DNA of 63,878 nt, counting the filler, from Perkinsus chesapeaki ATCC PRA-425 (taxonomy: Eukaryota > Protista > Perkinsozoa), in NCBI GenBank assembly GCA_013115145.1. It is 8 parts of 8 records of this genome, joined end to end, with 100 filler letters (N's around TTAATTAATTAA, not from the genome) between each part and the next. Parts side by side here need not be neighbours in the genome. Positions count along the whole stretch, not along the records: positions 41,579 to 45,239 come from JAAPAO010001371.1; 7 more parts are not named here. One strand, 5' to 3'. The translations under genes and the position numbers were made by a program. Each line of letters starts with the position of its first letter. Position 1 is the first letter of the stretch. Below, piece by piece: positions 3,823 to 47,288 of the stretch. The notes under the pieces were generated by a model. That model was not told the DNA's origin. It searched no databases and saw only the letters and a program-made list of their open reading frames with translations.

Positions 3823-4931
3823 ATATACTTAGATAAAGGACCAGAAAAAGCCGGACCATCCCGAGTATAGTCAATACGGTCGAGTCGTGCTCTCATAGCC
3901 TCCAACTTCTTAATACACGGAGGACCATTGATAACACAGTGACCGTCTGCATCACATAAGGAACAATGCATATCTCCCACCTTCTTAGTAGCCTTGAAGG
4001 GACAATCAGCTAATTTATGATCAGCTGCGCAAAATAAGCACTTCTTTTTTATAGAACAAGTACCATTTTTACCATGCAACCCACCACAGTCATAGCAATA
4101 ATTTATTGAAATAAAATCATGACATCTCAGCTTTTGACAGTTTACATATACACCATCATTCCTGATTAGAGTATCTCGGTCTTCTGTAGGCATACGGAAA
4201 ACGACAAATAACTCCTTATTCGTCACCACTTTCCAGCTCTCAACCGATAGGTTATTCATAACTTTAGAACATTGATTCATAATATCTTCCGGAGTCAGAC
4301 CTTCTTTGCGAACTAAGACCTCCGGTAGAAGCTTCTCTTGTGTGCGAACCGCATACCCACCGCCCCGTGAGGTTGTTTTTAACGCAGTAGAAACTCTTTC
4401 ACTGTCTTTGTCCGCCACCAAAACAGCTACATCCGAATTCCGAATGAAAACCTTATTAACTGGGAGTTGTGCAGTCATCAGGTGCTCGCAGACTTTAGTT
4501 TTAATTTTCTCCAGAGAACTCTCCATACTGGTTTCAGTAGCAGGTAAAGTGCCAGTCTTCTTCACCGATAGAAGTACATTCTTAGAATTAGGCCTCGAAC
4601 TATTGCTGGGTAAAGGGATACCAGATAAGAGGGTATTCTTGTAAGAGCGTCCCAAGTTTCCGTATGGGCCCATAGTTGAGGGAGGCATTCTATCAGCCTT
4701 CACCCTCAGGGCTCTGTTTTCTTCTAAAAGACCGATATAAAAACTCTTCATACTGCTTAGTAAAGACGTAACACTATTAGTGAGAGCGTCACCAAAGTCA
4801 TAGGCCTTTATGGTTTCTAGCATTCTGTCGCAGCATTCGTCGAAGTTTGAAGCATCTTCTTCTTCATCATCCGGGTCAGCCCAGCTACGGGAGGGATTAC
4901 TGCTACCGCTGGGAGAGCGGGAAGGGGGCAT
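3813..4931 (-). CDS. LINE ORF1, gag-like nucleic-acid-binding protein
   Basis: Open frame; C-terminal CYDCGGLHGKNGTC, CLFCAADHKLADC and CSLCDADGHC knuckles; likely start MPPSRS at 4931 because the upstream part of the predicted ORF reads through the minisatellite. Confidence 0.85.
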   Translation of the reverse strand: MPPSRSPSGSSNPSRSWADPDDEEEDASNFDECCDRMLETIKAYDFGDALTNSVTSLLSSMKSFYIGLLEENRALRVKADRMPPSTMGPYGNLGRSYKNTLLSGIPLPSNSSRPNSKNVLLSVKKTGTLPATETSMESSLEKIKTKVCEHLMTAQLPVNKVFIRNSDVAVLVADKDSERVSTALKTTSRGGGYAVRTQEKLLPEVLVRKEGLTPEDIMNQCSKVMNNLSVESWKVVTNKELFVVFRMPTEDRDTLIRNDGVYVNCQKLRCHDFISINYCYDCGGLHGKNGTCSIKKKCLFCAADHKLADCPFKATKKVGDMHCSLCDADGHCVINGPPCIKKLEAMRARLDRIDYTRDGPAFSGPLSKYICL

Positions 4932-5860: not shown

Positions 5861-6844
5861 TGTGGAGACAGTATTTTTGTTCTAAAGAGGACGACAGCAT
5901 TCGGTACTCCTTTGTCTAACTACGACGATTAACCTTCTTACGATGTTGGTACAGTTTAACAACTACTAATACTTGTCAACATTCATAGATAACGCTACGC
6001 TAAGTAGTCGATTAACCTACAAAGACCTTACAAAAGTTGTATTTTTCCTCATACTCTATATGACGAGTTTGCGTACTGTTACGCCAGATTAAATAGTCCA
6101 AACATGTTTGTTTGTTTGTTTGTTTGTTTGGGCGGCCTTGTTAGTGCAGAAACGGTCGTTTACCTCAGGGAAATGCCTCGATTCATATGAGTCGTCACGA
6201 CACCGAATGCCTTCTCACGTGGGGACGGCTACAAGTCGTCTAAGGTTTCAGTCGACTCCACGGACATCTCACAACAAATACCCTTATTCTAAAGAGTCAA
6301 CAACGGCAGCCGCACCGAGCGACACTTATTGCCCTGTGAGGCGATAGAGATTGTGGAGATACCTGCTAACACTGGAATTTACTCGTTAACGATCATCTTG
6401 GATTCTAAGATCATTCTTGAGGAGTTTTTCTTTTTAAGACTTGAAAAAACAATTCCCAAAACCCGAAAATCGCAGAGTCAACCATGAGGTTTTCGATGGG
6501 TCATCAAACTGCAGACTGTTGATCTGGTACTCTACAGAATGGTAAAGCGAGCTCGAAGCAATGAATCCGCCGGCAATATAAAATTCAACTTAGTGATAAT
6601 CTGACGAGCTGAATGTCTCCCCGTTGCTGATTCCCGTCATTCAACCGCGCATTCCTCCGATTGGGATACTGAACACAAAAAAGAGAGAGATCGGGCACCA
6701 AAGTTAGTTTTGATAATGTGTGCTTAAATGTAATGGTCCACTAGAATGGTACTAGTATTACAACCAACGGAACGGGTCCGGCTTATAAGTCCAAATTTCG
6801 GATAGGTCTCAACAATCTTAATAAAACTTAACCACCATCACCAA

Positions 6845-8724
6845 TCACACGTCCGCCCAGATCTGAATGATGCTAAATACGGTACCGAGGATGGCCGATG
6901 CTGACGCGACAGTGATGCCGATGTAAAGACTCACCACTACAGTCGAACTTGACGGTTTCATCATGATAAGATAGAATGCCAGTGGCATGATGAATAATAA
7001 GGCTGAAAAGAAAAGACGCAGATAAGGTTGATTCGAGTGCACCCGAAATATGGGAGGAAAGTTTTCAGAATTAATTAAAAAAGGCTTCAAGCAGAGACTC
7101 TCAGTTCGGAAAATATCAGTCCAGCTAGGGAATCATCCTCTAAATCGAAAACTAAGGAAATGAGAATGAGCCGATTTCCAATCTACTCGGTAAAGGGGCC
7201 GATTTTCCCGGGTATAGACGGTTTACAATCTCATACCATAAATTCCTCAAATCTTACCTATAGTAACGCTGCATCCCATGATGGCATACACTTGGGGCAA
7301 ATGGTTCTGCAATGCAACTGCGAGACCACAAACAACTAGCGTTACAAAAGCTCTGTATAATATACGTAATTTCACTGACGCCGTTTGGACCTGATGAAAT
7401 ACATATTGGTAATTGAATTCCCAAATAGAATCTGAGCTGGAGTTTTCCTACCACGCTGGCCTCGGTCATCGCCATCAAAGGGGTCATCAGCACTGGAATT
7501 GCCGAGAAGCCATAAAATATGTAAATAATATAAACAATGACAAAGCCGCCATATGGTATACCTGAGGATCGAACCAACGACCCTAAGCTTCAGAGAATAA
7601 CATCATAACCAACTCCTCTACCTCTCTGATAGTTCTCAAGGGCGGTCAAAAAGTTAGGGGGGCACTCGCTGCTTCCACAAAGATGCATTCCCAAGATCCC
7701 CACCACTAGCATATACAGCAAAGCACATCCGAAGCCGACCAGCGAACATAGGAGGAAATATTTCCTCCGAATTCTGCCTCGCCGACTCGTGATCGACTTT
7801 GTAATTTTCGTGGGTTCAACTTTCTCTTTAGCATCTTCCTGCGTCGCCTCGCTCGTTGCTGCCGATATTCTCGTATCGTTCACTTCGTTTGACCGCTCTT
7901 CGGAAATGCTCTTACTTCCACTTGTCGGATCTGAGGGAGTAAAACGATCAACTCAGACTAATTGAAGAAACATTTCAACGTAACTCCCAGAGCCCTCGGC
8001 GTTCCTAAAGCAGCGGTAGACGTCGACCGCGGAATACTGCCAGGCATACAAAAGCGCTATAATAATACAGTACGTCCCTTCTGACTAGTGCGACATTCCG
8101 ATCAGTAATGGAGATGTAGCCCGAACGTTCAGGTTAGAATGAAATGCAAAACTCACCAAACTTACCAGTTGCAGCAATGCCGGCGAAAACCGGCAAAGCG
8201 AATGCGTTGGAGAAAGCGTGAATGATAACTCCAAAAAGTACAAAGAAGTCACCCGCTCCAGCTTTGTTTGAATAAAATGGCATACCCACCAGTCGGGAAC
8301 GTGGAGGCTCCACCAGAAGAGCGATCGATGACGCCGCCTGACAGGAACGGTAACATTATTAATATTATAGAAGGCTTACCAGCGCAATCAAGCCAACCAC
8401 CAATGTGATAGGGGTAATAATAGAAAACACAGACCTGGCTTGAGAATAGACCGGTACCACCGATATAGCGAATGAAATGAAGGCAAATATCAGCACGCAG
8501 AATCCATCTGAGAAATAAACAAGAATATCGGAATGCTCACAAGCGCATGTGCAAAGTAGTCGCCTAGAGCTCCCTCGGATGAGTTGTATTTGTAATGAGT
8601 CTATTAAATACGATTTTATAGGTTGCCTAAAGTGACCGGGTCGTCGTAAAGATGCACAGCAAACGAGCTTCCCAACGCAACACATACGAATGAAAAGTCC
8701 TTGTTGAGGTCTCAAGGACTCCAT
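6845..8724 (-). CDS. Multi-exon polytopic membrane transporter (loosely equilibrative nucleoside transporter-like), possibly pseudogenised
   Basis: Series of hydrophobic exons (FFVLFGVIIHAFSNAFALPVFAGIAATG; YFLLCSLVGFGCALLYMLVVGILG; FVIVYIIYIFYGF; LFFSALLFIMPLAF) around a central hydrophilic loop; family call from topology only. Confidence 0.4.
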
Positions 8725-41246: not shown

Positions 41247-42116
41247 ATACCATTTCGTTTAGTCTGCCATGCAGCAGTAAAAGACTTAAAGGCTGAAGAA
41301 CATACTGTGAAGACATAAAGACAGTGACGCCAAGGGCTCCAGATCGAAAGCTCTCTGTCCCTCAACCTGTCTCTAGGGCGCATATTCGTCTATTCCCATC
41401 TACTGTATTGCTGCTCCATCAGCCAGGTACATAGAGACAGTCACCATAATGTACACGCGTGCAGCTTATTCCCTTGGGNNNNNNNNNNNNNNNNNNNNNN
41501 NNNNNNNNNNNNNNNNNNNNNNTTAATTAATTAANNNNNNNNNNNNNNNNNNNNNNNNNNNNNNNNNNNNNNNNNNNNTAATAATATTAGTTAGATATAT
41601 TTTTTATATATTTCGCTGTCACCACATCACCGGCCAATAACCGTGTATGTAATTTACACAGTGCCGGATTCACACTGACCGTCAACTTGGCACCCAAGGG
41701 CGGTGACACAAGTTATCCTTTGTGTCACAGTGCACAACTTCCCTAGTCTTCCCATACCGAATCTTCGGCGTTCGTGTCAACTTCGCAGAATGACTATGTT
41801 GTGCGGATGAAGGAAGATTGTCCAAAATATGGCTGGGTTGTCAATGGATTGTGAGAAGTTGTGAAGATAGAGGCGCAGCAAACACTAGCGAGGCCTAGGA
41901 CGCGAAGGCCCAGACTCAGGAGTCGGGATAAGTAGCAGGATATGGTGCAACAAGAGAGGATATTGGTGGCTTAAAATGTGCGCAAAATGCGACTCAATGA
42001 TAGCAATCGTGTGCGGCCCCGGTGAAAAACCAAGTGCACGTGAATTCTAGGCAGCTGCGCACTCGCACTGCAGAGTATGCGCGCGTCAAGTGAGCGCCAA
42101 GCGAACGCTCCGGTAA

Positions 42117-42167
42117 TTTCGTGGCGCGCAAGAATTTAATGCTACCCGCACACTATCAACGTCGACC
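42117..42167 (+). promoter_or_regulatory. Upstream elements of SL RNA gene 1
   Basis: TTTCG..GCGCGC, AGAATTTAATGCTAC (-47..-33) and TCAACGTCGACC (-22..-11) recur at the same offsets upstream of SL gene 2. Confidence 0.75.
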
Positions 42168-42177
42168 CCTATAGGTT

Positions 42178-42260
42178 ACCGTAGCCATCTTGGCTCAAGG
42201 TAAATATCCGGTCCACTCGCTAGGCTGCAGCCTAAAGGTGAATGCCAGTGACGACCCTTT
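42178..42260 (+). ncRNA. Spliced-leader RNA gene 1 (canonical 22-nt Perkinsus-type exon)
   Basis: ACCGTAGCCATCTTGGCTCAAG immediately followed by GTAAAT donor, TAGGC-TGCA-GCCTA hairpin and TTTTT about 80 nt from the start. Confidence 0.92.
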
Positions 42261-42296
42261 TTATACTTTTAAGTTGCTATTACTTGAAGTCAGCAT

Positions 42297-42377
42297 TTCC
42301 CCGTTCCCCTGGCCAATGTTGAACTGAAGGCTTCGTTTCACGAATGCAAGCACAACATTGACCAGGGGACCGGGGAA
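42297..42377. other. 81-nt hairpin (25-bp arms, 2 mismatches)
   Basis: TTCCCCGTTCCCCTGGCCAATGTTG (42297-42321) pairs with CAACATTGACCAGGGGACCGGGGAA (42353-42377). Confidence 0.85.
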
Positions 42378-42435
42378 TCTGAATATAATGCACACGCATA
42401 TCACTGTCATACGGTATAATCTAACTGAAATAAAC

Positions 42436-42494
42436 TGCATCATCCGAGAATCGAACTCGGGTCACAACGATGGCAACGTTGTATTCTACCACTG
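42436..42494 (-). tRNA. tRNA-Gly(GCC), 5'-truncated (first ~12 nt missing)
   Basis: CAGTGGTAGAAT-A-CAACG-TTGCCAT-CGTTG-TGAC-CCGAG-TTCGATT-CTCGG-ATGATGC-A; the expected 5' GCATCAT is replaced by unrelated sequence. Confidence 0.88.
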
Positions 42495-44712
42495 TGTATT
42501 GAGCGTTAATGTCTGCATTGTAGTTATCATTCATTTGCATACCACACTGGTGCATCATCCGATATGGCCGAGAATCTTCCTCAACCCCAAGCTGCTGCCC
42601 TTGACCAAGCTTCTATCGCCGCCCTGGCTGATGTTATCCGTACGATGGTGGTTGAAGCGAAGGTCACGATCGACCCTACCAGACCCCTCCAATGCGTGAT
42701 GGCCCTCCAGAATGAGGTTAATGAGGCTATCAATAAGTTACAGGCAGCGACCAATGTGGCCACGGCCAAGAATGAAGTTGGAGGACGCCTCCAGGATCTG
42801 AAGAGTTCCCTGAACAAGTTTAAGGATGCTTGGGAGACCCTTTCATTGACCGAACACCAGAACGCTACTATCTCTGAGGAAGCCTCCTATTCCGGTATCC
42901 CTCCAGCTGAGAGGATGCAACTTCGCATGCTCTCCAAGATGGACACCCTGGTTAATAAGATGACAAGACCCCCGGTGAATCGTTTCAACAACTCTCCCTC
43001 CGGTGTTGGAATGAGGTGTTACAACTGTAACCAGCTGGGCCACCAGGCCAAAGATTGTCCTAAGAAGACTACGCTTCTAACTGAAGGTGCCGTGCTGATA
43101 GTGATGAGGCAGCAATCAGCCGGCAGGAAGAAGCTAAGCCTCCTGATAAGTTAGATATATTGTTTTTGAAATTAGATAAGTTATCCCAAGATATCAGGGA
43201 TCTGAAGACTTCGAAGGGCGCTGAGCCCGAGCCCGATTCTGATGCGGCATCAACTGCAGCGTCTGATGAGGAAACCCCCAACAGCCCTAGGGAAGTGGCG
43301 CCCCCTGGGGACCGTGTCACTTTTGACTGTGATAATTATAATCTACGTTGGGATGATAGTCGAAGTATGTATGTTGTGAAGCTTAAGCAGGGCCCTCCGA
43401 GAGGGAAGGTCCCGCCTAGTGATGGGAGAAGGCAGAGCTACTGCCGTGATGATCAGTTGGTGACTCTTGAAGAAGCCCAGGCCGACATGGTGGAGTACGA
43501 CGCCAACGAAGAGATATCTGAGGAACAACTGATAGAAGAATGCTATCCATTAAGGATGTTTGTACCCCCCGAAGAAGGTCGCCGAGTGAGAGGAGTGTTA
43601 AACCTGATACAATTTAATGAACATTGTGGACAAGGCTCCCAAGCAGAAGCGAATATTAAGGACTTTAAGTCCTGGACTTATTTGAGAAACTAAGAGTGAC
43701 CAATACTGATAACGTGGTGCAGGCAGATTTATCACGAGCATTCTACTCGGTAGCTATAGAAGCTGAAGATGGTATAGCTGTACCATCTTCATACCATCTT
43801 CATCTTCATGTTGTAAGATGGTGAGACTGCCTATGGGCTGGAGATTCAGTATGAAGGTATTGTCCTTATGTGTAGAAGATATCCTGGGAAGATATTCTGA
43901 AGGACAACATCCCCGTTAAGGGAGTGACAAGAGTCGTGCATGCTAATAATATCGTGTATTCATCTGTGAAGGAGAAGAGTGGTATGGTACTTCAGCAGGT
44001 CGAGGACGATGAGAAGATTCTAAACGCTAGAGCCTTCAGATGGAAGCCAGGGAGCGTGGAGCGACTGAGAGACAATCCCGGTGACGCCATGAATGTGCTG
44101 GGTTATACTCTGTCCCGTTCAGATGACTCGTCCATCGTAATCGGCGTGAAGTATCGCACGCTGCCAGAGATATGGAGCCGAAGATCATTGTTACAATGGG
44201 CAGCTAAATGCTACGACGAGCTAGGCATCTCTGGAGCCGGAGCTATCAAGTCTAAGCTATCCAGCTTCGCGATGGCCGGTATACCCACTAAAGCAAGAAG
44301 AAAGTACATGGACGTCCCCTTATCGGTCGCTGAACGCCGAACAGTATGCCCATGGTTGGATGATCTTGTCAAGAAGTCTGGTAAACTAATCTCTTGGGCA
44401 CCCCGCACAGCGTGCGGGCGTGTACGTGCGTACACTGATGCAAGCGGCTCTGGCTGGGGCGTGAAGATCGTACAAGAAGGCCTAGCTCATCCTCTAGGAC
44501 GCTGGAGTGGACGATGGACGCAGAAGACGTATCACCTTGGGATGCCGGCGAAGGAGGCCCTTGGTATCATCAAAGGAGTGAGATACTGCCCATGGAAGGA
44601 AGCCGACATCTATTCTGACTCCAGCACGTGGGGTTTTGACGTGCTGCTGCTGGGGATAAAGATAATAGTAAGGGTAATAGCTGTATATCAGTGGGCACAT
44701 TATGCGAATTAA
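42493..44712 (+). mobile_element. Degenerate gag-RT-RNase H retroelement with tRNA-Gly PBS (5' part)
   Basis: TG..CA segment 42493-42546, PBS 42548-42562, gag 42564-43154 with CYNCNQLGHQAKDC, RT motifs VRGVLNLIQFN, ADLSRAFYSV (43723), RLPMGW (43824), dead HANNIV, VLGYTL, RNase H YTDASGSGWG/KEALG/YSDS; frameshifted; no integrase or 3' end found. Confidence 0.82.
42548..42562 (+). promoter_or_regulatory. Primer-binding site complementary to the tRNA-Gly 3' end
   Basis: TGGTGCATCATCCGA is the exact complement of TCGGATGATGCA+CCA of the adjacent tRNA-Gly; begins 1 nt after ...ACCACA. Confidence 0.85.
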
Positions 44713-47288
44713 TTAGATAATGAGGATACGATGAGTTGCTACAGTGGATTAGTGAAGTGAATTAATCCGAAACCCTTTAATTACGATAAGTGAATTAGTT
44801 CCTGCAGCTCTGCGGCGGAACATAGTTGATTATGGAAGACAGAAACCCGTCTCCGGAGGTTTGGAAGCAGTTTCTGCAGTCTGAGAGAGATTTTTTCGAT
44901 TTGAATGAACTTTCTCACAACATAACGTATGAGTAATATGCAAAGTTCATGGCTCTTCCAGGGAAGTGGATAGGTTTCATCGAGGTCAGGGCGACGGCTG
45001 AATATTCGAAGAACCGAATTGTGGTCCGGTCAGATGGCTCAATACTTAAAAACGGTGCCAGATATCGCTCGATAGAGTAATAAACTTGCCAAATGCCACG
45101 AAAAATCATCCAGGAGTCCTCGGATGTGAATTTTCTTTTGTTAAAGAAATGTTGAACTTGTTCATGAATCGAAGATAACTCGTTATCGGATGTTAAATAT
45201 CCCTGGAGTGACCAGGGCTTGCTATTCAAGTGGCTGTGANNNNNNNNNNNNNNNNNNNNNNNNNNNNNNNNNNNNNNNNNNNNTTAATTAATTAANNNNN
45301 NNNNNNNNNNNNNNNNNNNNNNNNNNNNNNNNNNNNNNNAGAGAAGGTCACTTGACGCTCACTGTGCATTTTACCTAGCTGAACACTCTCAGGCGAGAGT
45401 CTTCAACTCACAAAATAAGTCACCACGTCCGATTCATACTCAGTATAGAGTTTGCAGAGTCCGTACTTTTAACATGAAGCTTGAGTGTATACATTCAATC
45501 TTAACATTTATAATCTATATATTCGATAGTATCACACTTGAGTACGAGTTTGGCGAGCTTAGGACTAACAGTTGTGGTGTCGAACTCGTGTAGCATATTG
45601 AGTTCCTTGCGTGCGACATAGTAAACTGTTTGCCATGGTGTGACAGTCACGAGCCATCTCAAGTGTCATCTCTTTTTGCCCTGGAAAGTAGTACATACTA
45701 TCAGTGGAAGTTTACTCTCCAGCGGGAACTATTGTAACTAATCATAAAGCGGGTGTTAATGTATTTTGTGCATAATCTTGAGTTTGATCATTCTCAAGCT
45801 GACTGCATACCTGCCAATCGGAGGAAGCTGATTCCATTCCGGAACCCGCACCAACCCCATTGTCAGCTATCGTTCTGTTACTACACCCGTCTTTACATTT
45901 GTTACGCTTTCTGACGGTTAAGGTTCGACACTCCCACTCTCGCAATCGTTCGCATGGTTTGAGTATTCAATCGCCGTAGTCGTTCACGTTTGAGGCCAAG
46001 CCTGGCAGCCACTCTAGCCCACTCGATAAACGCAAACCTTTCCTCTACACAGAACACCAAAGCCGGTAATAATGGTAAGTCGATATCGATGAACATAAAC
46101 ATGATCACTTATTCATGATTCGCTGGAAGCTCGGAATATCCGGCTGGGACACACTCTTGCTTAGCAGCCTGAAAGGCTGTTTACGAAGCCACGCCATGAA
46201 TGCCCTACCTTGCCGACCTGTCACTCGAGGAAAAGCTCCTGTGAGACCTGCTGCCAACTGTAGACCTCGATCGGCGAGAACTAGGCGGGAGGCCCTTTGG
46301 CTCCCTTTCGGTGGGCGGCGGTCGACTCTCAAATGCTGAAAAGAATCTTTTGCACCTTACAAGCTCGGCTCGCTGCACTACGACTAGCAGACTTCTCAGT
46401 GAGATAGAAGCATTGCTTTCCTGCTGGACTCGTGTGGAGCTTGCCCAGTATAAGCCATGGCTTGGCGAGGAAGTCAACCTGACGACGAGCAATCATGATA
46501 GATGTTAAACGGTATTCGGTTACTGATGTGGTGTTAAGGCCTTCGTAAGTTGGTCTTTCCACGCGAGTGTTGAGAGGGTGGTAGTAGTGCTGCCACTGCT
46601 CACGGCCGATGCACTCTCTCCAGTATTGATCCTAAGATGGATGACAGATATCTTAGCGAAGCATTCTTCTTGGATTAATAGGGGTTAGAAATGGATCGTT
46701 TTTAGGCTTCACCGCTCAGAGCTTTTGGAGTCCGCTTTTATGCGACACAAAGTGTATCACCCACCGGGAGCTATCAAAGACAAAGCATAGTGTTTTAAAA
46801 CATAAAGTGGTAGATAACGTGCACTAGTTTAATCCGACCTGCGTCCAAGGGACTGCTTCAATAAGAAAGTTAGAGTGTCCACAGCGAGCCATGGTTTGGA
46901 AAGGGCGCTACTGACACAATACTGAGCAAATAAATATCAGACTACATAGAGGGACTGGTCAAGAGAGCCATTACGGAGTACTTGGTACTCTACAGCTCAA
47001 TGCTATTCCAAAATCGGCTAGAGGTGTCAGAATCTTCAGAGGGACATACTTCATTCTCGAGAGAGCGCAGGTTGATATTCTATAATCTTTAAGGTATTGA
47101 AGTTCGTGATAATAAAGCAAATCAATCGAAACGTAGTTCTGGAACTTCCCAACTGAGCACCATTTTCGTCAGGGAAATAATACCTATTTTTGGGCGCGCG
47201 CCAAACAAGCTGCGCTCCTCTTTCATTTAATTACGGTGGAAATCATTTTTCTTTGTAACTATGGGACTGTCTTTTGTCAGTGTTATTA

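What the first reader, a model, noticed from the sequence alone, without database searches (positions are those of the whole stretch)
42436..42576. Retroelement that is primed by tRNA-Gly and sits inside a tRNA-Gly gene, with an apparent 52-54 bp LTR
Seen: a tRNA-Gly(GCC) gene on the minus strand is broken in its D-arm/A-box. At the break starts TGTGTATT...ATACCACA (TG..CA, imperfect terminal inverted repeat), then 1 nt, then a 15-nt PBS exactly complementary to the 3' end of that same tRNA, then the gag ATG. The codons after ATG (CCGAGAATC) resume complementarity to the tRNA T-arm. Known: Ty3 and Dictyostelium elements target tRNA gene flanks, and from memory (verify) Dada DNA transposons of Perkinsus insert in tRNA A-boxes. 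Inference: this may be a tRNA-gene-targeting retroelement family with unusually short LTRs whose primer and target are the same tRNA. Alternatives are a longer LTR that captured tRNA sequence (Cassandra-like) or nesting in a Dada end.
Basis: partly seen in the sequence, partly recalled or inferred. Interest (0 to 1): 0.85.

Follow-up and report, generated by a model that had tools for sequence, protein, structure and literature searches.

The report
Dead mini-retroelement inside a tRNA-Gly gene
A decayed copy of a small Perkinsus retroelement that uses tRNA-Gly as its replication primer sits inside one copy of a highly repeated tRNA-Gly gene, but its relatives carry the same primer site elsewhere in the genome, so the match of primer and target looks incidental.

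Summary
The piece is a complete 3,661-bp Perkinsus chesapeaki contig. A tRNA-Gly(GCC) gene on the minus strand is cut between nucleotides 13 and 14, in the A box. At the cut start 54-55 nt of retroelement leader, then 1 nt, then a 15-nt primer binding site (PBS) exactly complementary to that tRNA's 3' end plus CCA, then the gag ATG. Contigs from two studies span the junction, and other gene copies are intact.

The same 15-mer precedes gag in four further independent copies in P. marinus and P. olseni, although gag is only 24-65% identical, so the PBS is functional. The family is found only in Perkinsus. It is tiny (about 2.7 kb): gag-UGA-RT/RNase H, no protease or integrase, and an approximately 80-bp terminal repeat in P. 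olseni.

The window copy is a single-copy, frameshifted, 3'-truncated relic with no 3' LTR. The missing tRNA 5' piece is also absent.

Targeting is not established. Only 2 of about 9 loci lie in tRNA arrays: tRNA-Gly here, and a tRNA-Asp array spacer in P. marinus. Primer equals target is not a family rule. The youngest copy has circularly permuted LTR ends, which suggests integrase-independent integration.

The parts
41579..42435 (.). High-copy genomic repeat on the 3' side of the tRNA gene. Next to the tRNA 3' end it reads GTTTATTTCAG in tRNA sense, a weak Pol III terminator-like T-rich stretch.
   Evidence: Summed contig depth is in the thousands, against 9/141/92 for the element body. Sequence.
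42436..42493 (-). tRNA-Gly(GCC) gene fragment, nt 14-73. There is no encoded CCA. The 5' 13 nt are missing.
   Evidence: The intact 5' part is seen in other copies as the loose end behind 42493.
42493..42547 (+). Retroelement 5' leader or short-LTR remnant (TG...CA plus 1 nt). It contains the family-conserved (C/T)AGTTAT box about 30 nt 5' of the PBS. The T at 42493 is shared with the tRNA.
   Evidence: Homology to the leader of P. marinus L001 (p about 0.006 against shuffles) and weaker homology to P. olseni leaders.
42548..42562 (+). Primer binding site, an exact complement of tRNA-Gly(GCC) nt 62-76 including CCA.
   Evidence: The identical 15-mer sits at the same place in L001, L002, L003 and L007/L008.
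42564..43154 (+). gag ORF (196 aa) with a CCHC zinc knuckle at 43014-43064. Its C-terminal end is frameshifted.
   Evidence: Pfam zf-CCHC 3.8e-08. It is 65% identical to P. marinus P0001.
43079..43090 (+). Relic of the conserved gag-UGA-pol readthrough site (AACTGAAGGTGC). Here it is out of frame with gag.
43160..44694 (+). Decayed pol: RT and RNase H in several frames with many stops. Motif C reads HANN at 43939-43950. The end of RNase H is missing.
   Evidence: tblastn against relatives, Pfam RT_RNaseH, and 32 in-frame stops.
44695..45239 (.). Low-copy sequence unrelated to the element, with another repeat starting near 45167. There is no 3' LTR and no tRNA 5' piece.

Best explanation
The locus is a dead, single-copy relic of a small retroelement family known only from Perkinsus.

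**How an intact member is built (P. olseni).**
- A terminal repeat of about 80 bp, then 1 nt, then a 15-nt PBS for tRNA-Gly(GCC).
- gag of about 186 aa with a CCHC knuckle.
- A single in-frame UGA that is presumably read through.
- RT-RNase H of about 560 aa.
- A 3' UTR of about 255 nt, then the repeat again. The unit is 2,612 bp plus one repeat.
- There is no protease and no integrase.

**How it most likely works.**
- Replication is primed by tRNA-Gly(GCC) annealed to the PBS. This is inferred from the exact, conserved complementarity.
- Without an integrase, copies most likely enter the chromosome by illegitimate end joining of linear or circular cDNA at DNA breaks. This is also inferred.

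**What happened here.** One such fragment landed in one member of a very high-copy tRNA-Gly(GCC) gene family, between tRNA nt 13 and 14. It then decayed through frameshifts, stop codons and loss of its 3' end.

**Why primer equals target.** The identity is most likely indirect. A strongly amplified tRNA gene is both an abundant primer and a large, harmless target. A looser preference of this subfamily for tRNA gene arrays is possible but unproven.
For: - **Origin.** The piece is the whole contig of P. chesapeaki protein KAF4649995.1.
- **Exact PBS.**
- **PBS conserved.** The identical 15-mer lies directly before the gag ATG in 5 independent copies from 3 species, with gag only 24-65% identical.
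- **Restricted family.** An exhaustive HMMER search returned only 10 clusters. All strong hits are Perkinsus.
- **Retroviral-type RT-RH.** Pfam RVT_1 and RT_RNaseH give weak hits. A family profile hits HIV-1 RT at 8e-06. The Atlas model of P0006 aligns over residues 16-497 with LTR-retrotransposon pol at TM 0.72-0.80.
- **No protease or integrase fits the unit.** gag-UGA-pol fills it. Contig L003 closes on itself with 73 identical terminal nt, giving a 2,612-bp period. L002 shows the same period.
- **Non-canonical ends.**
  - L002 has intact ORFs but runs from LTR position 52 through a full unit and a full LTR into 'ACT' plus LTR positions 1-36. That is the product expected from an LTR-LTR junction opened inside an LTR.
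  - L005/L006 carry an inverted 3' UTR+LTR fused to gag.
  - L001 ends inside pol and is joined to the body of a tRNA-Asp gene with 89 bp of the array unit missing.
  - The window copy ends inside RNase H.
- **Repeated target, unique element.** The tRNA flank is repeated and the element body is not.
- **Same PBS, different places.**
Against: - Two of about 9 independent loci lie in tRNA gene arrays, which are a small share of the genome. That is more than a random scatter would give (roughly p = 0.01 if arrays are 2% of the genome). Both belong to the same subfamily, so some Pol III-gene preference may be real.
- The break is in the A box, where Perkinsus Dada transposons insert (PMC3706591). 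The left end starts with TG, as an integrase-processed LTR would.
- Whether the 54 nt are a complete LTR cannot be settled. Alignments to relatives place its start 6 to about 30 nt inside their repeats.
- The closed contig L003 could be an assembler's path through two LTRs rather than a circle or tandem.
- An integrase supplied in trans is not excluded.
- The sample of copies is small and mostly decayed.
Confidence: 0.6

Rival explanations
1. This is a retroelement family that specifically integrates into the gene of the same tRNA that primes it, for example because primer tRNA or tRNA-derived sequence on the cDNA guides it to the homologous gene.
For: - The primer and the disrupted gene are the same tRNA here.
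- The left end begins with TG exactly at the break.
- Relatives carry an exact 14-nt copy of the tRNA-Gly T arm (nt 48-61) directly 5' of their 3' repeat. The family therefore holds more tRNA-Gly sequence than the PBS alone.
Against: - The P. marinus copy with the identical PBS lies in a tRNA-Asp array spacer. Other copies have no tRNA gene nearby.
- The tRNA piece lacks CCA and runs on into genomic repeat, so it is a gene and not copied primer.
- Read-through of the primer would place tRNA complement 3' of the leader, not 5' of it.
- A crossover through the PBS homology would split the gene at nt 61/62, not at 13/14.
- Only one junction of one decayed copy exists.
Confidence: 0.1
2. General Pol III-gene or tRNA-array targeting that is independent of tRNA identity. 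This would resemble Ty3, DGLT-A or TRE elements. Alternatively, cDNA could be captured at breaks that Dada transposases make in A boxes. The tRNA-like A-box and B-box modules in the element's 3' UTR might tether it to TFIIIC.
For: - Two of about 9 loci lie in tRNA arrays.
- The break is in the A box.
- Dada families that cut tRNA A boxes exist in Perkinsus.
- There are three B-box-like motifs and one A-box-like motif in the 255-nt 3' UTR of the P. olseni element. One such motif is conserved in a P. marinus subfamily.
Against: - The positions are inconsistent: inside the gene at nt 13/14 in one case, and 48 nt 3' of one tRNA-Asp gene and 147 nt 5' of the next in the other.
- Seven loci have no tRNA gene nearby.
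- Arrays may simply preserve dead insertions better than other DNA does.
- Short repeat-rich contigs may be over-represented in fragmented assemblies.
Confidence: 0.22
3. The retroelement is nested at the end of a Dada-type DNA transposon that had already inserted into the tRNA-Gly A box. On this reading the 54 nt are a Dada terminus.
For: Dada-tG_PMar exists and Perkinsus Dada elements target A boxes.
Against: - The 54 nt align from their first base with the leaders of relatives that are not in tRNA genes.
- Dada-tG_PMar is reported for tRNA-Gly-GGA, not for the GCC anticodon.
- The contig holds no transposase.
- Dada termini were not available to compare.
Confidence: 0.04
4. The junction is an assembly artefact that joins a tRNA repeat to an unrelated element.
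For: The left part of the contig is highly repeated, and repeats invite misjoins.
Against: Unitigs from runs of two separate studies cross 42493/42494 with no mismatches (records 7, 16 and 24).
Confidence: 0.02

Closest known systems
LTR retrotransposons of the Ty3/gypsy and BEL/Pao type
   Same: - gag has a CCHC knuckle.
- RT-RNase H is of the retroviral fold.
- The PBS is complementary to a tRNA 3' end and lies 1 nt after a ...CA end.
- There is a short terminal direct repeat.
- The nearest non-Perkinsus sequence hits carry Pao peptidase and integrase domains.
   Different: - There is no protease and no integrase.
- The unit is only about 2.6-2.7 kb, with terminal repeats of about 55-80 bp.
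- RT motif C is YADN, not YxDD.
- No copy with canonical LTR-TSD ends was found.
tRNA-gene-targeting retrotransposons (yeast Ty3, Dictyostelium DGLT-A and TRE; PMC5006619, PMC6101501)
   Same: Two copies lie in tRNA gene arrays.
   Different: - Those elements integrate at fixed distances upstream or downstream of tRNA genes, using their own integrase or ORF proteins bound to TFIIIB/TFIIIC.
- Here the positions vary, one insertion is inside the gene, most copies are elsewhere, and no integrase is encoded.
Dada DNA transposons of Perkinsus marinus (Dada-tG/tI/tL/tY_PMar; PMC3706591)
   Same: The host genus is the same. The target is a tRNA gene broken in the A box.
   Different: - Dada elements are DDE transposons of 4.7-11 kb that leave 6-7-bp target-site duplications.
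- This element is an RT-encoding element with a PBS.
- Dada-tG is reported for tRNA-Gly-GGA.
Pararetroviruses and their endogenous copies (Caulimoviridae, Hepadnaviridae)
   Same: - There is no integrase.
- A tRNA PBS is used, as in caulimovirids.
- The unit-length contig closes on itself.
- A short terminal redundancy is present.
- Integrated copies are permuted, inverted and truncated.
   Different: - There is no protease, movement protein or envelope gene.
- No episome has been shown.
- The sequences are not detectably closer to those viruses than to LTR retrotransposons.
Cassandra TRIMs (Pol III gene sequence inside the LTR)
   Same: Relatives carry tRNA-like A-box/B-box modules, in sense orientation, next to the terminal repeat.
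   Different: - In the window the tRNA is antisense and is a genuine genomic gene whose other copies are intact. It is not part of the repeat.
- Cassandra elements are non-coding.

Membership tests
LTR retrotransposon (order LTR) | RT and RNase H of the retroviral type | tested here: met
   - Pfam RVT_1 and RT_RNaseH hits are below the curated cut-offs.
- The family profile hits HIV-1 RT at 8e-06.
- The Atlas structure aligns with TM 0.72-0.80 to LTR-retrotransposon pol.
LTR retrotransposon (order LTR) | PBS complementary to a tRNA 3' end next to the 5' LTR | tested here: met
   An exact 15-nt match that is conserved in five independent copies from three species.
LTR retrotransposon (order LTR) | Two direct long terminal repeats flanked by a target-site duplication | tested here: not met
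   - The window has no second copy of the 54 nt.
- P. olseni L002 has an 80-nt repeat, but its ends are permuted and there is no TSD.
- L003 closes on itself.
LTR retrotransposon (order LTR) | Protease and integrase in pol | tested here: not met
   gag-UGA-RT-RH fills the 2.6-kb unit, and no such domains are found.
tRNA-gene-targeting retrotransposons (Ty3/DGLT-A-like) | Most copies at a fixed position relative to tRNA genes | tested here: not met
   Two of about 9 loci lie near tRNA genes, at different positions.
Dada DNA transposons | DDE transposase, and a family-specific small-RNA gene target with a 6-7-bp TSD | tested here: not met
   - There is no transposase.
- The 54 nt are homologous to retroelement leaders.
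- Dada termini were not available for comparison.
DIRS-order tyrosine-recombinase retroelements | Tyrosine recombinase ORF, and inverted or split terminal repeats | tested here: not met
   - No recombinase is present in the unit.
- The split or inverted repeats seen in L002 and L005 differ between copies.
Pararetrovirus-like episomal retroelement | Circular unit-length DNA genome replicated through a terminally redundant RNA, without an integrase | tested here: inconclusive
   - A self-closing 2,612-bp contig and a permuted integrated copy fit this model.
- No test for extrachromosomal DNA was possible.
Cassandra-like LTR with a captured Pol III gene | The Pol III gene sequence lies inside both LTRs | tested here: not met
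   The tRNA fragment continues into genomic repeat, and other copies of the gene are intact.

The most novel reading that the evidence does not exclude
Perkinsus harbours a previously undescribed lineage of integrase-less and protease-less retroelements (gag-UGA-RT/RH with a YADN catalytic motif). On this reading they replicate through a circular or terminally redundant form, like a minimal pararetrovirus. They carry tRNA-Gly mimic modules next to their terminal repeat. They enter the genome at breaks in Pol III genes, possibly breaks made at A boxes by Dada transposases.
Probability: 0.15. Interest if true: 0.8.

Novelty: new variant of a known kind. Interest (0 to 1): 0.5.

Why it matters
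**If only the best explanation holds.** The locus is an ordinary dead insertion. The primer-equals-target coincidence should not be read as a mechanism.

**The family behind it is unusual.**
- It keeps gag, RT and RNase H but has no integrase or protease.
- Its terminal repeats are among the shortest known.
- The conserved tRNA-Gly PBS abuts the start codon.
- Motif C of the RT carries a conserved Asp-to-Asn change.
- tRNA-like modules sit next to the terminal repeat.

**What it could be used for.** The family offers a compact system for asking how a retroelement persists without its own integrase. It also bears on whether tRNA gene arrays, greatly expanded in Perkinsus, act as landing pads or as graveyards for mobile DNA.

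Tried and rejected
- **3' LTR or missing tRNA half in the contig.** None found.
- **Primer read-through or copied mature tRNA as the source of the tRNA piece.** Rejected. There is no CCA, the flank is genomic, other copies are intact, and the piece lies on the wrong side of the leader.
- **Crossover through the PBS homology.** Rejected, because it predicts a break at tRNA nt 61/62.
- **Assembly chimera.** Rejected.
- **The CCGAGAATC 'resumed complementarity'.** It is not present in any relative.
- **tRNA genes near the other copies.** ARAGORN and Rfam find none. A tRNA-like stretch at L002:3760-3850 and T-arm-like motifs in L004 are not recognised as tRNA.
- **Public collection scans.**
  - The metagenome scan with PBS plus TATG gave two hits.
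  - The viral-collection scan with the PBS alone gave 75 hits.
  - None of these shows tblastn similarity to the family proteins, so I treat them as chance hits.
- **Family searches.** The word-index protein searches and the exhaustive search gave only Perkinsus family members plus weak BEL/Pao-like hits.
- **AlphaFold model of pol.** Built from 8 sequences, it was poor (mean pLDDT 51) and was not used for fold search. The Atlas model was used instead.
- **Literature.** Searches found no description of this family or of a YADN reverse transcriptase.
  - No RNA run holds the locus.
  - Look-up of the window's own gag found no exact record.
Full report
**What the piece is.** The range 41579-45239 is a complete 3,661-bp contig. 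Its annotated product is Perkinsus chesapeaki KAF4649995.1 (P0002). No further context exists in the assembly. The exact-protein look-up of the window's gag found no record.

**Checking the observation**
- ARAGORN calls a tRNA-Gly(gcc) at 42436-42504 on the minus strand.
- Rfam's tRNA model gives 28.0 bits against a gathering score of 29. The non-canonical pairs lie only in the acceptor and D stems.
- The anticodon arm, variable region, T arm and 3' acceptor strand are good tRNA. The first 13 positions are not.
- Region 42548-42562 is an exact 15-nt complement of the tRNA's last 12 nt plus CCA. The gag ATG follows one base later.
- Between the tRNA part and the PBS lie 54-55 nt that begin with TG and end with CA.

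**Read evidence.** I laid Logan contigs of three runs from two studies on the contig.
- The stretch 41579-42562 has summed depths in the thousands. The element body 42563-45145 is covered by a single unitig at depth 9, 141 or 92. The flank is therefore highly repeated, and the element is unique at 90% identity or more.
- The unique unitigs start at 42464-42479 and cross the junction without a mismatch. The join is real.
- Other contigs leave the reference just behind 42493 and continue with AGACCAATGATGC.., the complement of a proper tRNA 5' end (GCATCATTGGTCT).
- Intact gene copies therefore exist, and this one is broken between nt 13 and 14, inside the A box. One T is shared at the joint.
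- The tRNA piece has no CCA. It runs on into a T-rich stretch and genomic repeat. It is a gene, not a reverse-transcribed primer.

**The element is a relic**
- gag (42564-43154) has a CCHC knuckle.
- The rest matches relatives only in pieces, with 32 stops in the gag frame.
- The RT active-site motif is degraded to HANN.
- Homology stops inside RNase H near 44694.
- The contig holds no second copy of the 54 nt and no tRNA 5' piece.

**Relatives**
- The only close gag homologue is P. marinus PMAR021230 at 65% identity.
- An exhaustive HMMER search with the P. marinus pol ORF found ten clusters. The strong ones are all from P. marinus, P. olseni and P. chesapeaki. The weak ones are BEL/Pao-like.
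- I fetched twelve loci.
- The exact 15-mer TGGTGCATCATCCGA lies directly 5' of the gag ATG in:
  - L001 (P. marinus);
  - L002 and L003 (P. olseni subfamily A);
  - L007/L008 (P. olseni subfamily B, one locus seen in two isolates).
- gag is only 24-30% identical between these subfamilies. That conservation shows a functional PBS.
- The leaders share a (C/T)AGTTAT box about 30 nt 5' of the PBS, and most end in CA plus 1 nt.
- The window's 54 nt align from their first base with the P. marinus leader (p about 0.006 against shuffles). They belong to the retroelement, not to a foreign transposon end.

**Anatomy of an intact member.** In P. olseni L003 and L002, gag (186 aa) and pol (RT-RNase H) are in one frame, separated by a single UGA.
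- The context AAY-UGA-MGG-KGC is conserved in L003, L001 and L007. This suggests readthrough.
- The window keeps the motif at 43079-43090, but out of frame with gag.
- There is no room for protease or integrase, and no domain of either is found.
- Contig L003 (2,685 bp) has 73 identical bases at both ends, a period of 2,612 bp. L002 shows the same period.
- In L002 an 80-nt repeat (6478-6557) follows a 255-nt 3' UTR. At the 5' side only its last 29 nt remain (3917-3945). After the 3' copy come 'ACT' and then the first 36 nt of the repeat again.
- That arrangement is what an LTR-LTR junction (a two-LTR circle or a tandem) opened inside one LTR would give. It occurs in a copy with intact ORFs.
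- L005/L006 carry an inverted 3' UTR plus repeat fused head to head to gag, with the PBS lost.
- L001 ends inside pol and is joined to the body of a tRNA-Asp gene, with 89 bp of the array unit missing.
- No copy has canonical LTR-TSD ends.
- Together with the missing integrase, this points to integrase-independent, illegitimate integration. That step is inferred, not shown.

**Is there tRNA-gene targeting?**
- Of about nine independent loci, two lie in tRNA arrays:
  - the window, inside tRNA-Gly;
  - L001, in the spacer of a 268-bp tandem tRNA-Asp(GTC) array. The insertion is 48 nt 3' of one gene and 147 nt 5' of the next.
- The other loci show no tRNA gene by ARAGORN or Rfam.
- Two in nine is more than expected if arrays are a percent or two of the genome. 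Both copies belong to the same subfamily, so a loose preference, or better survival in arrays, is possible.
- The rule 'primer equals target' fails in L001.
Dada-tG_PMar is reported for tRNA-Gly-GGA, and three other Dada families duplicate TAGCTC in the A box (PMC3706591).
- Capture of cDNA at a Dada-made break is an attractive conjecture, but it is untested.

**Mechanisms linking primer and target that I considered**
- Read-through of the primer would put tRNA complement, starting with TGG, on the 3' side of the leader.
- A crossover through the PBS homology would split the gene at nt 61/62.
- A template switch onto a tRNA molecule would give sense, not antisense, tRNA.
- None of these fits the observed order: gene complement 73 to 14, then leader, then PBS.

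**Classification**
- The RT-RNase H is of the retroviral or LTR-retrotransposon kind, but it is very divergent.
- It lacks the genes and ends that define LTR retrotransposons, DIRS elements or Dada elements. See the membership table.
- I found no paper describing the family. Repbase could not be consulted.

**Verdict.** Same-tRNA targeting is not supported as a family property and remains a single, probably incidental, event. The family itself is an unusual variant worth a proper census.

Noticed in passing
L003:768-2357; alignments A3/A4; window 43939-43950: RT motif C is YADN instead of YxDD. It is invariant in every family member across three species at 30-40% identity, and is degraded to HANN in the window. 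I found no literature on such a motif in reverse transcriptases.
   Followed up: partly
L002:6464-6477, L003:2602-2615, L005:388-401 (minus strand), L004:11658-11671: An exact 14-mer, CCCGAGTTCGATTC, equals tRNA-Gly(GCC) nt 48-61 in sense orientation. It lies directly 5' of the start of the terminal repeat in P. olseni subfamily A and P. marinus subfamily B. It ends exactly where the PBS complementarity (nt 62-76) begins. Its function is unknown. It might be a primer mimic, an aid to strand transfer, or a TFIIIC site.
   Followed up: partly
L002:6235-6330: The 3' UTR of the P. olseni element starts with a degenerate tRNA-like unit. It has an A-box-like TTAGCTCAGTACGGAGAGC and two B-box-like GGTTC(G/A)ATTCC motifs, in sense orientation.
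   Followed up: partly
L003:657-686, L001:1146-1175, L007:1615-1644, window 43079-43090: A single in-frame UGA lies between gag and pol, with the conserved context AAY-UGA-MGG-KGC. This suggests programmed readthrough.
   Followed up: partly
L002:3337-3415 and 7047-7123; L002:3430-3620 and 6800-7040: The L002 copy and about 0.5 kb on each side are bracketed by direct copies of a 36-bp minisatellite. The inner flanks carry multiple TTTCGTCCA / TGGACGAAA motifs in inverted orientation, as in the subterminal repeats of a DNA transposon.
   Followed up: no
L005:316-653 and L006:110-446: An inverted copy of the element's 3' UTR plus repeat is fused head to head to the gag start, with the PBS lost. 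About 100-bp tandem repeats lie upstream in L005.
   Followed up: partly
L001:1-540 and 2330-2772: P. marinus contig GG684761.1 is a tandem array of tRNA-Asp(GTC) genes with a 268-bp unit, interrupted by the truncated retroelement.
   Followed up: yes
window 42297-42320 and 42354-42377: An imperfect 24-nt inverted repeat (about 22 of 24 complementary, 33-nt spacer) lies inside the high-copy flank of the tRNA gene. I saw it directly in the sequence. It falls below the seed length of the repeat tool.
   Followed up: no
window 45146-45239: Depth rises about tenfold and loose ends appear at 45167-45170. Another repeat starts at the right end of the contig.
   Followed up: no
L004:9294-9782 and 1364-2027; L004:3549, 7734, 7960, 9070 (minus strand): About 70-bp tandem repeats abut the 5'-truncated P. 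marinus copy. Several T-arm-like motifs followed by T runs lie upstream on the minus strand. Rfam does not recognise them as tRNA, and they may be a tRNA-derived short repeat.
   Followed up: no
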